From the NCBI GenBank assembly GCA_001179505.1, contig CDMY01000275.1, positions 434,001 through 498,000 on the forward strand: DNA of 64,000 bases, written 5' to 3'. Both the position numbers and the translations under genes were made by a program. The stretch comes from Vitrella brassicaformis CCMP3155 (Eukaryota > Protista > Chromerida). The notes beneath the pieces were generated by a model that had not been told where the DNA came from, ran no database searches, and saw nothing but the letters and a program-made list of their open reading frames with translations. This document shows, in pieces, positions 49,880 through 56,010 of this stretch; position 1 is the stretch's first letter, and each line of letters begins with the position of its first letter.

Positions 49880-52100
49880 AGGTATCCCGCCTCCCTCGTA
49901 AAAACCCGACAGGCCTCGTAAAGGTAAGAAGCCCAAAACTCCGCTCAATTCACTCACAGGCAGGAAACTACCTGCAGGTGTGTCTGCCTGACTGTCCTCC
50001 CTCCCTGTCTCTCTGTATGTCTCGCTCCTTCTCCATATTTGTCCCGTTTTGACAGGTACGCCGCACCATCAGTGGTTGGTTTGCTCGCCCAAGACTACGC
50101 GCATCAAATGCAGCATTGAGCTGACCACAAAGGTGCGAAGAGAGAGGGGCAGCAGCACGTACACAGGCAGAGCACCGACGCTGGCACGATTTTCACTTTT
50201 CTGACTGTAGGGTGACCCTTGCCGCCCACCCACAGACCGACAGAGACCTGATCGATGAGAAACAAGACCACTCTGGGGTCACGCACAGAGTGTCGCCGCC
50301 TTGGCCTGCTTGTTTCCTCTCCCCCTCCTCCACCAGGCCCTTCGAGGTTGTAGAGGTATCGGTTGCGTGATGTCGGTTGCGTGGTGTCGGTTCGGCCGCC
50401 GAAGGCGGCCCAAACGGGGGTGCGGGGGCGGAGCCGCCCCCGACAGACTGTCGTTGCTACTTTGATCCATACATGAGGTCGACCGAGAATCTCATCGGCC
50501 TGTTGAGTGCCTACAAGTGGCATACACAGCAAGGGCAGCCGTCTCCATCGCACACAACCTGCCTTGCCTTCTGCCACGTCATCGATTGGCGCCGCACACA
50601 GAGTAACGCCGCTTATCTGTCGCTCTGCCCGTCCTCAAGGATGCACTTTCATGATGCAGCCCCCGGCCCACCCATTCCCTCCGCCCCAGAGACTGCAGCG
50701 GGCGCCCACCCCACAGACGGACGCTGTCTCCCATCGACACACGAGGACTCATTACTTGAGCGCCAGCCGTCGCTTCCCGAGACGCTGAGGCGTAATAGCA
50801 GTGGTAGTGGTGGTTTCTCATGCAGAGATGACTCTGACGGCAGGGCTGCTAAGGTTGACGAAGGTCCGTGGGGAGTCATTGTTTGGCACGGAGCAGAAGA
50901 GGAGCGTCGCCGAAGACGTGTGAGAGATTCACTCCATGTGGACGAGACGTGGATGGCATGGAGGGGATTCAGGCCTCATGGGGCAATCGTCTGAGGAGCG
51001 GGTGGGAATCCAAGTCTCATTTCAGTCACGTCTCAATGAGCTGGACACCATCTTGGGTCATCGATTGGCGCGTTGTCCACTTTGCCGACGAGCCGACTGC
51101 CGCCGAGCCTTCAGAGGCAGAAGACAGGAAGAGATAGGCCTGTGTCGATTGTGGAGCGTGTCGGTTGACGGACCTCTTGCATCGCCAGTATTGATTCCTG
51201 AAAAGCTTCTCTCTTCCGCTGCCTGTCAACCTGCACCCACAGCCCGTCACACCACAACTATTGATGGATCCGTTCTCTCTATTCTCAGCGCACCTTCCTG
51301 GCCTCAATTGCCCGCCTGTGGGCATGCTGCTCATCCTCACTGCGCCTTCTGGCCTTGGCAACCATCTAAGATGCAAGCAAGATTGTATAGCGGTGTTTTC
51401 CCCATGGTCTTCTTCCCCCTGCGCACCGTCTTGTGTCGTGTGTGTTGTGTCTGTCGTCGGCGCATCGCTCGTGCGGCTTCAATGGCCTTCAAAAGAACGC
51501 TCTCCTGATGATGGAAGTGGTCCAGACCCAACACACGGCCGCTGCGAAACAAACACCGACAGTAGATTTCACCACTGACGGGCGGGGCCGTACTGCGCGT
51601 CAATCTGTGGGAATGAGGGGGGAAAGAAGACAAGGTGAAAGATTCGGACGCCGTGTGTGTCGATGATCTCCTGCACTTACGAAGCCTAGACCATCCAGGT
51701 TCTTCAGCAGAATGGAACTCTGCCAGAAAGGACCTGACGTATCGGGGTATGCAGATAGGTGACTCAGAGGGAGGCACAGCAGCAGATCAATGCCAGAAGG
51801 AAGTCCTCACCGAGGTGGGGATCTGCAATGAAGTCATAGGGCATGAGGGGTGCAGGGCCAGACGGCACGTCGAAGGAACGCCTCCCCTCCAGCCTACACA
51901 CACAAACGAAAGCCGCACAACGTGAGGGGCTCTGGGGGGAGGAGGTTTGTCCTGGATTGTCCATCCCCTCTCACCTCCTGGTTGTGCTTGCAGCCCCTGC
52001 AGTTGATTGGAGCCTTCTCATCTCGTCGGGCCCGGACGGTGAGCGAGAATGGAGGAATTCGAAGACTGGCTGTGATTCACACCGCCTCATGGACCAACCA
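49880..52100. other. Unresolved region with splice-like signals but no coherent ORF (lncRNA, UTRs or decayed gene)
   Basis: Plus-strand aag|gtaag..ctgcag and ttttgacag at 49920-50055. Minus-strand exon-like pieces at 51300-51950 hit stops in every join I tried. Confidence 0.2.
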
Positions 52101-52306
52101 AAGATCTCGTTGTGTCGGGTCGTCAGTGGGGAAACAGAGAAGGGGGTCTCTGAGGGGGAGTGAGGGGGAGGAAAGAAAAAGAAGGGGAGGAAGGGATCGC
52201 CTCCGCGAGCTAAGCTTGCAGGTACAGACGTTGGCTTTCTCCACGCGCTCGACAGAGGGGCTGGGCTCTATCGTTCGGCTAGGCTCTATCGTTCGCCAGT
52301 GCCGAA

Positions 52307-54565
52307 ATGGGCTGGCATGTGCTGCTGTCGGCCCTGGCGGCGAGATCAGGCCTCCTGGAGGGATGGCCACATGCCCTGTCATCTTTCCCATCTGCCCAGG
52401 CTGGCGACCCGCCGTGGCGCAGATGCAGCAAGTGGCGCCGCAAAGCAGCCGGCGACGACACAGGTGCGTCAGAGGCCTTCCTCTATCCCGTTTCAACGCG
52501 CATTCAGCGGTCACGCGCAGCCAGGAGGCCTTCGCAAGTCCGCCAGCAGCCACAGAGCGGCGAGCGTCAGCGCCCACGGCCGAGATCCCGGCTGTCAGCG
52601 GCCAGCGTGAGTCCGCCGGTTATCGATGATGCTTTCCTGCCAGCGTCGCCGCCCGAGGAGAAGCGGGCTGATGAGAGTCACGAGAGACAGAAGGGATGGC
52701 GGCCATGGCGCGCTTTGAAGCGTCTCGGCCTCCCCATATATCGGCAGAAGCAGATACTGTTGGGTCTGATGTTCTTTTTGGCGCTTTTCAACAGCACCAT
52801 AATTCGGGACACCAAAGACGTCCTTGTTATCAGCTGCCCGGGTGGCCCGGAGATCATTCCGTTCTTGTCGACGTACGTCAACCTGCCCCTGTCGGCGGTG
52901 TTCATGCAGCTCTACTGGAAGATATCCACCTTCCTCGGCGCGGAGACCCTCTTCTACTCGGTCTTCTTCCCCTTCTTGGCCTTCTTTGTGGGCTTCGCCT
53001 ACTTTGTGTTCCCCAACCTCAACAAGATCCACCCAACGTGGCTTATCCCTTTCATCGAGGAGAAGCTGCCGTGGGCATATAGGTAGGTGGGTGAGCCACA
53101 GCAAACCACAGACAGGCCTGACACGCACGGTGAGGGCTCATGGGCGGATAGGCACGTATGTGTGTGTGTATCTGCGGCTTTGTTCAGGTATGAGTCGCTG
53201 CTGCAGGTGATCCAGAATTGGTCGGTGTCGCTTTATTACCTCATCGCTGAGCTTTGGGGGTCGGTGACGATAAGTCTGTTGTTTTGGGGCTTCTGCAACG
53301 AGGTCAGCAGCGTCAAGGAATCTCAGGACATTTATCCTCTCTATGGCGTCGGGGGGCAAATCGCGCTCATCATCTCAGGTGCGTACGTGCGTGACACACC
53401 CACACGCTGTTCGTTCATCCACATGGATGCATGGATGTGTCCGTCAGGCATCATCATCAGCCGCATGGCGACCATGCCGGCGAGCTGTCCTCCGGGAGTG
53501 GACTGCTTCTCCCTCTCCCTCCGGCGGCTCATGAACACCCTTGGCGGCTGTGGGCTCGCATTCGCCGGCATCTTCTGGTTCATGAACCGGTTCTTCATCA
53601 ACAATCCCAAGATATACCCGCCCGGCGACATCGTCACCCCGAGCAACGCCAAAGGGCCCACACCCACACCGACAGGGGAGGCAGACAAGACCGCGCCAGT
53701 CAAGGAGGAGAAGAGGAACAACCGCAAGACCAAACTGGGTGTGCGGGCCACTTTCCGGCTGCTGGCGAGCTCCTCGTACATCCAGAACCTGGCCATGATG
53801 CTGGTGTGCTTCGGGGCGTCGCTCAACATAGTGGAGGTGGTGTGGAAGATTCTGCTTCGGGAGTACTACACGGACCGCAATGCCCTCACCAACTTCTATG
53901 GCGTCTACTCCACCCTGTCAGGTGGGTGCGATGCCGCAACACCCACGGATCGTTGACCATTCATCCTCCTTCTGGCTGTGGACGACCTGCCTGCAGGTGT
54001 GGCCACGATGGGTCTAATGCTGCTGAACCGGTGGATCGTGAAGAAGCGGGGCTTCCGCACGTCGGCCCTCATCACTCCGGTGGTGCTGTCGTCGACGGGC
54101 CTGCTGTTCTTCCTCTGCCTGTTGGGCCGTGGCGGGTGGGGCGGCCCCCTCACCCCGTTGCTGTCCACCATCCCCCTTGACTTCCTCGTGTGGGTGGGGG
54201 CCATCCAGAACATCTTCTCCAAGTCGGCCAGATACGCCCTCCTGGACCAGTGCAAGGAGTGGGCGTACCTGCCGCTCGGGCAGGAGCTCAAGAGCAAGGG
54301 CAAGGCGGCCATCGATCTGGTCGGCATCCCCTTCGGCGAGTCAGTGGCCTCACTGGTGCAGCAGTTCATCATTGTGCAGATGGGCCATTTGCTGCCGGCC
54401 ACCCCATGGCTGGCCCTCACGCTGACGATAACGACTGCGGTGTGGCTCAAGAGCACGGTGCAGCTGTCGAGGCAGTATCACAACATGCTTGAGTGCGGAG
54501 AAGAGGAGTGTGATGGCCAGGATGGGGCCAAGGGAGTGACGCCCCTCATTGCCGCAACCGGATGA
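52307..54565 (+). CDS. NTT: TLC/NTT-family nucleotide transporter (non-mitochondrial ATP/ADP translocase homologue) with an N-terminal leader; 4 exons
   Basis: FNSTIIRDTKDVLV, AELWGSV..LFWGFCNEV..YPLYG, LNIVEVVWK, VGAIQNIFSKSARYALLD..KEWAYLPL..KGKAAIDLV. Confidence 0.93.
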
Positions 54566-55222
54566 GACCGATAGGGCGAGGGAAGGGGGAAGGGGTGTCT
54601 CGTCGATGCACGACTGTGCACGGGGGCCTGCTCAGCGAGTGCGAAGTGAGGTGGGGGTCTTTGTCTGTTGATCGATCATGGTGCCTGTCGGCTGGTAGCG
54701 AGCGAGTGCTTCATGGTCGTGCATGTGGACCATTTTGTCTTTTGCTGACTGACTGCATATCCCCCTGAGATCAACCATTTCATCGTAGTGTGGCGGGACG
54801 GATAGAGACCAAAGACCGCACCCTCAGCCCGTGAGCCTGCTCTCTGGCGCCATCCTCCATGGTATGGCCGGTCGCAAACAAGCTATGCGCCCGATCATGC
54901 CGTGAAAGACGACCTCACAGAGTAGGATGCTGAGAGGCGTGGCAATGCAGACACACGTGAGTCAGCCCAATCCTGAACTATACACGTCGCCCACTTCATT
55001 CACATCAGGACATCCTGCCTGCCTCCGCTATCCAAGAAGCGACAACCAGGCCTGCCTGGCCAGATAGAGCCTTACTTACATGCACACCGAAAAACCCATC
55101 AATGCTGTTTGTTCTGGTCCCATCCAGTACGCTAGCTCCGTACTGTACACGTCGTAGGCAGGCCATCCACCACCACATGTTGACTTGACCTTTTCGTTCG
55201 GCGGTCCATTGGCTGCAGGCAG

Positions 55223-55800
55223 CTACAGGTCTGATGTGTCCCGCCTCTTGGATGGAGGGACCTGAGGGAGGGAACAGGAGCAGGACCAAGGTGACAGACA
55301 TTCTTCTCGGTGTGTGGTGCGTGTGGCATGATCTTACATAGAAGAGGCGCTTGGCTTCGTCGACCACGCACTTGAAGCTCACGGGCTCCGTCTCGGCGAG
55401 GGTGCACAGCGTCTTCCTGCACCCATCCCATCACACAGCACAACGGCCGACCGTGCTCACGCACATGATCTGCCTGCCCCTGTCTGCCTTTCGTGCACCC
55501 CTCCCTGTTGACGTACCTGTCCAGATGTATGTTGCCCCTCTGCAGGGCGCACTGCAGCCAGGCGTAGGGCATGTTGTACTCCCTGCTGGCAGAGTTGATG
55601 CGGGAGATCCAGTGCCGCCTGAACAGCCTCGAACGGTCGTGACGCGCAAGGTAGCTCTTGAACAAGGCGTGCTCCACCTTACGCGCCGCCAGCTTGAGGC
55701 ACCCTTTGCTGCGGCCATAGAAGCCGCGTGCTATCTGAAAGATGACCTCGCGAGGGATGCGCCCACCGCTCCCGAGGCAGACTGGCGATAACGAGATCAT
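55223..55800 (-). CDS. MRPL20: Organellar (probably mitochondrial) ribosomal protein bL20
   Basis: IFQIARGFYGRSKGCLKLA..ARHDRSRLFRRHWISRINSASREYNMPY..LQRGNIHLDR|KTLCTLAETEPVSFKCVV; 3 exons. Confidence 0.88.
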
Positions 55801-56010
55801 CTGAGGGGCTGCGTGGCCGGCTTGATTGGTCTTGCGGTCGTTCGACGAATTGCATTTTCGAGCTCGCAAGTCGATCGCCCCCTTCCGCCGTTTTGGCTGT
55901 TCTGAGCTTCGCCGCGGCACAGACGTTCATTCCGATGTCGTGTGGTAGGAATTGTCGCAACTGGCGTCCTGTGAACCACTGAGTTGACGTCAGAGTAGCG
56001 GCCCCAGTCA

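What the first reader, a model, noticed from the sequence alone, without database searches (positions are those of the whole stretch)
54301..54365. NTT transporter has Glu at the conserved GKSGG lysine: possibly not an energy exchanger
Seen: KAAIDLVGIPFGESVASLVQQ (GAG at 54338-54340). The other charged landmarks are intact (RDTKD Lys, AELWG Glu, VEV Glu). Established: plant and chlamydial ATP/ADP exchangers read ..PLGKSGG.., and this Lys (K527 in Arabidopsis NTT1) is needed for efficient ATP transport and the phosphate co-substrate. Inference: this gene is a natural K-to-E variant that may be a net nucleotide importer or have shifted specificity. NTTs are not part of the usual apicomplexan transporter set, so a variant in a free-living relative matters for plastid nucleotide supply.
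Basis: partly seen in the sequence, partly recalled or inferred. Interest (0 to 1): 0.72.

Follow-up and report, generated by a model that had tools for sequence, protein, structure and literature searches.

The report
Divergent algal nucleotide transporter lacking key lysines
The alga Vitrella brassicaformis expresses a second, fast-evolving copy of the plastid-type ATP/ADP transporter in which both lysines known to hold the nucleotide phosphates are replaced (Ser and Glu), so it probably no longer swaps ATP for ADP and phosphate, though what it carries is untested.

Summary
GAG at 54338-54340 encodes Glu in the column of AtNTT1 K527 (GKSGG reads GESVA), and one DNA-type and three spliced transcript assemblies show the same letters. 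The gene has four exons and encodes 669 aa. It equals a database protein of Vitrella brassicaformis annotated only as "ADP,ATP carrier".

Numbering against PDB chain 9j3j shows that K155 is the Lys of IPFLK, not of RDTKD. That column is Ser here, so two of the four classic charged residues are lost.

Both lysines are present in 119 of 119 nearest plastid-type relatives, including the alga's own canonical paralog, and in nearly all of about 240 other sampled sequences. No ortholog exists: the next hit is 43% identical.

The protein sits inside the eukaryotic plastid-type clade on the longest branch of the tree (2.37 against a median of 0.5). It departs from 68 of 213 near-invariant columns, yet it models confidently as an NTT.

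Published K-to-E mutants lose ATP affinity and all Pi transport. The most likely reading is a neofunctionalised carrier that is not an ATP/ADP+Pi exchanger. The "net importer" idea has no specific support, because proton symporters keep this Lys. Substrate and location are untested. NTTs in Vitrella were already reported in 2017.

The parts
52307..53082 (+). Exon 1 (ATG at 52307). It holds a 146-aa basic presequence with no Pfam match, then TM1-TM3 of the TLC domain.
   Evidence: It is the first ATG of the transcript. Pfam PF03219 matches at 8.5e-25. The exon end comes from the spliced contigs. The codons equal database protein P0275.
53083..53187 (+). Intron 1, 105 nt, GT..AG
   Evidence: The joint is present in spliced contigs of runs X6, X7 and X8.
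53188..53378 (+). Exon 2 (AELWG helix; E280 = AtNTT1 E245 at 53249-53251)
53379..53447 (+). Intron 2, 69 nt, GT..AG, open in frame
53448..53921 (+). Exon 3 (central loop, TM7; E452 = AtNTT1 E385 at 53834-53836)
53922..53996 (+). Intron 3, 75 nt, GT..AG
53997..54565 (+). Exon 4 to the stop codon (TM8-TM12, holds the finding)
   Evidence: Pfam PF03219 matches at 1.2e-41, profile positions 330-491
54338..54340 (+). GAG = Glu595, in the column of AtNTT1 K527 / PamNTT1 K446. It is one base from AAG (Lys).
   Evidence: It lies in model helix 437-470.
54344..54349 (+). Val597-Ala598 replace the Gly-Gly of GKSGG
   Evidence: Gly at both columns in 119 of 119 nearest relatives
52868..52870 (+). Ser188, in the column of AtNTT1 K155 (IPFLK)
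   Evidence: Numbering against 9j3j_A. Lys in 119 of 119 relatives and basic in 63 of 63 representatives. It lies in model helix 41-70.
54230..54232 (+). Arg559 replaces the Lys of SKSAKY
   Evidence: Lys in 118 of 118 relatives
52814..52816 (+). Lys170 of RDTKD, conserved.

Best explanation
This is an expressed, intact paralog of the plastid-type nucleotide transporter (TLC/NTT family) of Vitrella brassicaformis. It has evolved about five times faster than its relatives and has remodelled its substrate site. Shown: it keeps the 12-helix NTT fold and both intramembrane glutamates. It has replaced both intramembrane lysines (K155 to Ser188, K527 to Glu595), turned the GKSGG motif into GESVA, and lost five further conserved basic residues. 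[quoted passage not shown] The protein therefore most likely does not carry out ATP/ADP+Pi exchange. It probably moves a substrate with fewer phosphate charges, such as a nucleoside di- or monophosphate or a dinucleotide-type cofactor, and probably still by an alternating-access exchange or uniport cycle. The canonical exchanger role is left to the second Vitrella gene (P0278), which keeps every landmark and a clear signal-peptide-like leader. Substrate, transport mode and membrane are not shown.
For: Identity and expression: Pfam PF03219 matches on all coding pieces. Spliced contigs occur in three runs from three studies, and there are no letter differences. The database protein P0275 (669 aa, Vitrella brassicaformis) equals the exon codons. 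Fold: the AF2 model has pLDDT 89.9 and pTM 0.89, and its best structural match is ADP/Pi-bound AtNTT1 9j3m at TM 0.84/0.91. Lost lysines: column mapping against 9j3j. K155 and K527 are Lys in 119 of 119 nearest relatives and in the paralog. K527 is Lys in 141 of 147 representatives and in 94 of 96 bacterial ORFs. Divergence: the variant differs at 68 of 213 columns that are at least 95% conserved, including K149Q, K188S, K305Q, R333P, K414N, R435Q and K595E. Its end branch is 2.37 against a median of 0.5 and 0.44 for the paralog, and it lies inside the eukaryotic plastid-type clade with SH-aLRT 99 and 97. There is no ortholog: the next hit is 43% identical at 302 bits against 850 for self, and at most 53% identical over exon 4 among 1.84 billion representatives. 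Mechanistic precedent: PamNTT1 K446E blocks Pi uptake, raises the ATP Km from 8.6 to 552 uM, and gives the highest Vmax for ADP homo-exchange (PMC2606016). AtNTT1 K527E binds ADP but not ATP, and K155E binds neither (PMC3306366).
Against: No transport data exist for this protein. Mutant phenotypes in AtNTT1 and PamNTT1 need not transfer to a protein that differs at 68 conserved columns, and compensation elsewhere is possible. Microsporidian ThNTT1 and ThNTT3 lack K155, E245 and E385 (PMC4256464) and are nonetheless listed as ATP/GTP against ADP/GDP antiporters (PMC6995639 table 2), so loss of K155 alone does not stop nucleotide transport. The diatom review states that NTT transport properties cannot be predicted from sequence similarity (PMC6995639). 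I could not read residue contacts in 9j3l or 9j3m, because no coordinates or paper were available. With no ortholog, selection on Ser188 and Glu595 themselves cannot be measured.
Confidence: 0.55

Rival explanations
1. It is still an adenine (or other) nucleoside-triphosphate transporter. The loss of the two lysines is compensated by other changes in the cavity, and the gene is simply a fast-evolving second isoform, for example for another membrane of the complex plastid.
For: ThNTT1 and ThNTT3 lack K155, E245 and E385, and the diatom review lists them as ATP/GTP against ADP/GDP antiporters. E245, E385, the RDTKD Lys and GKAAID are kept. The fold is kept. New arginines appear at G501R and P466R. 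Diatoms use several NTT isoforms in different membranes (PMC6995639).
Against: Every characterised NTT mentioned in the papers read keeps K527. No basic residue is gained within several residues of Ser188 or Glu595. Glu is not merely neutral: it puts a negative charge where the gamma-phosphate or Pi is thought to sit.
Confidence: 0.2
2. One reading: it is a net (proton-coupled) nucleotide importer rather than an exchanger.
For: Net importers exist within the plastid-type clade (diatom NTT1; PMC6995639). The K446E mutant loses Pi co-transport, which is part of the balanced exchange cycle.
Against: The Lys is not a marker of exchange against symport. ThNTT4, a symporter, keeps all four residues. 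Both paralogs of a Chlamydia genome and all well-scoring chlamydial paralogs keep it. The K-to-E mutants became poor ATP importers, not uncoupled importers.
Confidence: 0.1
3. It is a decaying or non-transporting copy under relaxed selection. It is transcribed but has no carrier function.
For: It has the longest branch in the tree. It differs at 32% of near-invariant columns. No ortholog is known in any other organism.
Against: The 669-codon frame is intact across three correctly spliced introns. 145 of 213 near-invariant columns are kept, including both glutamates. The model is confident. Spliced transcript contigs were assembled in three studies. A frame drifting freely over 2.4 changes per site would not stay open.
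Confidence: 0.1

Closest known systems
Plastidic ATP/ADP+Pi antiporter AtNTT1 (AATP1, UniProt Q39002; PDB 9j3j, 9j3l, 9j3m)
   Same: Same Pfam family (PF03219). About 41% identity. The model matches at TM 0.84/0.91. E245, E385, the RDTKD Lys and GKAAID are conserved. The gene lies in the same eukaryotic plastid-type clade.
   Different: K155 is Ser, K527 is Glu, GKSGG is GESVA, and SAKY is SARY. 68 of 213 near-invariant columns differ. AtNTT1 mutants K155E and K527E lose nucleotide or ATP binding.
Vitrella brassicaformis canonical NTT paralog (P0278, genome contig C781)
   Same: Same genome, same family, same red-lineage subclade, similar length (671 against 669 aa), and also interrupted by introns.
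   Different: Only 44% identical. It keeps K155, K527, GG and SAK. Its end branch is 0.44 against 2.37. It has a strong signal-peptide-like N-terminus, with 9-mer hydropathy 3.23 against 1.89.
Engineered mutants PamNTT1 K446E/Q/R and AtNTT1 K527E/R
   Same: The same column carries the same residue (Glu).
   Different: These are single substitutions in an otherwise canonical exchanger, made in the laboratory. Here the change is natural and accompanied by many others. The mutant phenotype is no Pi uptake, ATP Km 8.6 to 552 uM, and favoured ADP homo-exchange.
Bacterial and microsporidian NTT paralogs with substituted key residues (TM6/Dependentiae paralogs; ThNTT1/3; EhNTT3/4; chlamydial L106; P0072)
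   Same: These are natural paralogs that departed from the four-residue pattern. Their authors read this as neofunctionalisation (PMC4776705).
   Different: The microsporidian cases keep K527. L106 has Arg at K527 and Glu at K155. P0072 has Asp at K527 but keeps K155. None combines Ser at K155 with Glu at K527, and none is of the plastid type.

Membership tests
TLC/NTT nucleotide transporter family (Pfam PF03219) | Significant match to the family profile over its whole length | tested here: met
   The three coding pieces score 88, 147 and 143 bits against a cut-off of 21 and cover profile positions 24-491. P0275 carries PF03219.
TLC/NTT nucleotide transporter family (Pfam PF03219) | 12-helix MFS-like fold of the solved NTTs | tested here: met
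   The model has pLDDT 89.9. The top five PDB matches are all NTT structures, with TM up to 0.84/0.91.
TLC/NTT nucleotide transporter family (Pfam PF03219) | Four conserved intramembrane charged residues (K155, E245, E385, K527 of AtNTT1) | tested here: not met
   E245 and E385 are kept. K155 is Ser188 and K527 is Glu595.
ATP/ADP+Pi antiporter class (AtNTT1, PamNTT1, Npt1, Tlc1) | Lys in GKSGG, needed for ATP import and Pi co-transport | tested here: not met
   GESVA. [quoted passage not shown]
ATP/ADP+Pi antiporter class (AtNTT1, PamNTT1, Npt1, Tlc1) | Measured ATP/ADP counter-exchange with Pi | not testable with these tools
   This needs uptake assays with the recombinant protein.
Plastid-type (photosynthetic eukaryote) NTT clade | Branches within the clade of plant and algal NTTs | tested here: met
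   The full-length tree gives SH-aLRT 99 and 97 for the enclosing eukaryotic clades. On exon 4 alone the constrained clade is not rejected, p-AU 0.89. The long branch makes the exact position unsure.
Plastid-targeted protein of a complex red plastid | Bipartite leader: signal peptide followed by a transit peptide | tested here: inconclusive
   There is a 146-aa basic N-terminal extension (26 K+R in the first 140 residues), but only a weak hydrophobic start (9-mer hydropathy 1.89 against 3.23 in the paralog). No targeting predictor was available.

The most novel reading that the evidence does not exclude
A plastid-type NTT has left nucleoside-triphosphate transport altogether. With both phosphate-binding lysines gone and seven conserved positive charges lost, it may carry a new substrate class for the TLC family, such as a nucleoside monophosphate, a dinucleotide or another weakly anionic metabolite. 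It may also sit in a membrane other than the inner plastid envelope of this apicomplexan relative.
Probability: 0.25. Interest if true: 0.75.

Novelty: new variant of a known kind. Interest (0 to 1): 0.55.

Why it matters
The Lys of GKSGG is, according to a 2019 review, the only sequence feature of NTTs that can be tied to a substrate interaction. It is described as the most conserved of the four classic residues. A natural, expressed protein that carries Glu there and Ser at K155 is a ready-made test of what these residues do. It would show whether NTT substrate range can be read from sequence. It also raises the question of what a second, remodelled NTT does in a free-living relative of the apicomplexans, the only alveolate lineage reported with NTTs. 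The scope is limited: it is one gene in one species, and its function and location are unknown.

Tried and rejected
Sequencing error, strain polymorphism and RNA editing are rejected: four assemblies from four studies are identical over 51800-55100.

A pseudogene is unlikely: the spliced 669-codon frame is intact, the model is confident, and 68% of near-invariant columns are kept.

A shifted alignment that puts another Lys in the column is rejected. The flanks are identical and ungapped in the PDB alignment, and there is no Lys or Arg between GKAAID and the end of the helix.

Searches that led nowhere:
- The profile word search with alignment A1 listed only canonical chlamydial Npt1-like proteins, so it said nothing about rare variants.
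- The single-protein scan returned only chlamydia-type loci and not the characterised Protochlamydia genome. I therefore could not name PamNTT2-5 or read the column in the NAD+/ADP carrier PamNTT4.
- Five literature searches for the paper behind 9j3j-9j3o found nothing, so residue contacts with ATP, ADP and Pi are not cited.
- The exon-4-only tree was unresolved.
- A check for apicomplexan NTTs (Cryptosporidium) was inconclusive.
- The bacterial promoter/terminator scan is irrelevant to this eukaryotic gene.
- The scan's earlier notes hold nothing on this gene.

Full report
**What is there.** Window 54301-54365 reads KAAIDLVGIPFGESVASLVQQ on the + strand, and 54338-54340 is GAG. The surrounding open frames match Pfam PF03219 (TLC ATP/ADP transporter) in three pieces that cover profile positions 24-491. 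The genome has 72.7 Mb in 1064 contigs. I confirmed this when the word search returned the gene's own product, P0275, labelled "unnamed protein product [Vitrella brassicaformis CCMP3155]" and "ADP,ATP carrier protein" in UniRef.

**Gene model and expression.**
- I laid 3,301 letters (51800-55100) against four public runs.
- Contigs of X6, X7 and X8, from three studies, skip three GT..AG introns: 53083-53187 (105 nt), 53379-53447 (69 nt) and 53922-53996 (75 nt). These contigs therefore come from mRNA. X3 holds the unspliced DNA form.
- No run shows a different letter anywhere in the stretch. The GAG codon, and the Ser codon discussed below, are thus confirmed in DNA and in transcripts, and editing is excluded.
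- The exons are 52307-53082, 53188-53378, 53448-53921 and 53997-54565. The first ATG of the transcript is at 52307.
- A JGI transcript contig (L109) shows the same splicing but has an N gap.

**How the spliced model was handled.** Full-length work used the database protein P0275 and the clean part of L109, both by reference. In one search a script only checked, codon by codon, that P0275 equals the four exons. It does, at 669 aa, and nothing joined was printed, saved or sent.

**The column.**
- HMMER alignment of exon 4 to the solved AtNTT1 chain 9j3j_A is ungapped around the site. GKAAIDLVGIPFGESVASLVQQF lies under GKAAIDVVCNPLGKSGGALIQQF, so the Glu sits under chain K443.
- Chain E161 (AELWG), E301 (LVEV) and K443 all fit an offset of 84 to the published E245, E385 and K527. 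The Glu is therefore in the K527 column.
- The same offset places K155 at chain residue 71, the Lys of IPFLKTW, not at the Lys of RDTKD, which is chain 52.
- In this gene the true K155 column is Ser188 (IPFLSTY, window 52868-52870). Two of the four classic charged residues are therefore lost, not one.

**How unusual this is.**
- A full scan of 1.84 billion cluster representatives with exon 4 gave 1382 hits. Among the best 150, 147 cover the column: 141 have Lys; Asp, Gln, Ser, Arg and Ile occur once each; and the only Glu is a fragment of this very gene.
- Among about 90 bacterial ORFs, all have Lys at both columns except one divergent paralog (L106: Glu at K155, Arg at K527) and one distant acidobacterial sequence with Asp. 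These ORFs come from 79 chlamydia-type loci and the paralogs of five chlamydial genomes.
- Among the 119 nearest full-length relatives (plants, green and red algae, MMETSP and EukProt entries, and the second Vitrella gene), K155 is Lys in 119 of 119 and K527 is Lys in 119 of 119. The two glycines after K527 are Gly in 119 of 119, and the Lys of SAKY is Lys in 118 of 118.
- The second Vitrella gene (P0278, contig C781) keeps every landmark.

**No ortholog, long branch.**
- The next best hit to P0275 has 43% identity and 302 bits, against 850 bits for self. No representative exceeds 53% identity over exon 4.
- A full-length maximum-likelihood tree (52 rows, 552 columns, quick search) places the protein inside the eukaryotic plastid-type clade, with SH-aLRT 99 and 97. 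Within it, the protein falls in the subclade (SH-aLRT 82) that holds red algae and the Vitrella paralog.
- Its end branch of 2.37 is the longest in the tree, against a median of 0.5 and 0.44 for the paralog.
- On exon 4 alone the free tree was unresolved. Holding the protein with the eukaryotic group gave a better likelihood, with p-AU 0.89.
- Of 213 columns at least 95% conserved among the 119 relatives, the protein differs at 68. Seven of these are lost basic residues: K149Q, K188S, K305Q, R333P, K414N, R435Q and K595E. Two are gained arginines: P466R and G501R.
- Against the broader family it departs from 14 of 70 conserved columns, against a median of 7%.

**Still a transporter fold.** AlphaFold2 with a 75-row alignment gives pLDDT 89.9 and pTM 0.89. 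Ser188, Glu280, Glu452 and Glu595 all lie in long helices, at model residues 49, 141, 313 and 456. The best structural matches are ADP/Pi-bound AtNTT1 (9j3m, TM 0.84/0.91), ATP-bound AtNTT1 (9j3l) and Chlamydia pneumoniae NTT1. The fold, the intact spliced frame and the 145 retained near-invariant columns argue against a decaying gene.

**What the lost residues do, from papers.**
- In PamNTT1, K446 is the K527 equivalent. K446E completely blocks ADP-dependent Pi uptake. It raises the Km for ATP import against ADP+Pi from 8.6 to 552 uM and drops Vmax from 31.3 to 2.4, while ADP homo-exchange has the highest Vmax. [quoted passage not shown]
- In purified AtNTT1, K527E binds ADP (about 19 uM) but not ATP. 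K155E binds neither, and K155R binds no ADP and binds ATP only weakly (PMC3306366).
- K527 is described as the most conserved of the four residues (PMC10654386). The phosphate site is described as the only sequence feature tied to a substrate interaction (PMC6995639).

**Mechanism proposed.**
- Shown: an expressed plastid-type NTT paralog with the fold kept and both lysines replaced.
- Inferred: the site for the third phosphate or for Pi is abolished and turned negative, and the overall positive charge of the protein's conserved core is reduced.
- The protein therefore most likely does not run the ATP/ADP+Pi cycle. It more likely handles a substrate with fewer phosphate charges. I put this at about 0.55.

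**Limits and rivals.**
- Microsporidian ThNTT1 and ThNTT3 lack K155, E245 and E385 and are still listed as purine nucleotide antiporters. Compensation is therefore possible, and I put that rival at 0.2.
The symporter ThNTT4 keeps all four residues, and the chlamydial paralogs keep the Lys. I put this at 0.1.
- A non-functional copy is unlikely, at 0.1.

**Location.** This is open. The canonical paralog starts with a strongly hydrophobic, signal-peptide-like segment followed by a transit-like region. This protein has only a weak hydrophobic start and a very basic 146-aa extension with no Pfam match. The link to plastid nucleotide supply is therefore an assumption.

**Novelty.** NTTs in Vitrella were reported in 2017 as the first in an alveolate (PMC5381601). 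That paper does not mention these residues, and my searches found no paper that does. Bacterial paralogs with substituted key residues have been read as neofunctionalised (PMC4776705). This is a new variant of a known kind: the only plastid-type NTT seen without either lysine.

**Not done.** I had no residue contacts from the solved complexes, because no paper or coordinates were available. There is no dN/dS, because there is no ortholog and no variation among the runs. I had no targeting predictor and no named PamNTT4 sequence.

Noticed in passing
window 53083-53187, 53379-53447, 53922-53996: All three introns have lengths divisible by three (105, 69, 75 nt), so all exons share one frame. Intron 2 has no in-frame stop, so its retention would add 23 residues without breaking the frame.
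   Followed up: partly
window 55132-55920 (- strand); L109:2728-3129 (-): A convergent gene for ribosomal protein L20 (PF00453, 5.7e-19; spliced form 7.9e-25) lies just downstream. Transcript contigs of the NTT gene run on into it, so the 3' ends overlap or the assemblers merged the two transcripts.
   Followed up: partly
window 51809-52195 (- strand): Spliced contigs in X6 and X8 skip 81 nt with CT..AC ends (GT..AG on the minus strand). This marks an unrelated upstream gene on the opposite strand.
   Followed up: no
G000:C781:25453-27355 (L002-L011; protein P0278): The second Vitrella NTT gene is canonical at every landmark and has a strong signal-peptide-like N-terminus. It is probably the real plastid energy exchanger.
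   Followed up: partly
L106 (G001:C1:1750507-1751826, Parachlamydiaceae bacterium SSA5): A divergent chlamydial NTT paralog (E-value 4.6e-62) has Arg at the RDTK Lys, Glu at K155 and Arg at K527. It is another natural departure from the pattern, and its function is unknown.
   Followed up: no
P0072 (491 aa, metagenomic; sister to P0118): A bacterial NTT cluster has Asp in the K527 column (GTDIGDTG) but keeps K155. It is the only other acidic residue seen in that column among the close representatives.
   Followed up: no
runs X12, X14-X19: Marine sediment metagenomes hold 8-45% of the sampled words of this gene. This suggests that Vitrella or a near relative occurs there.
   Followed up: no
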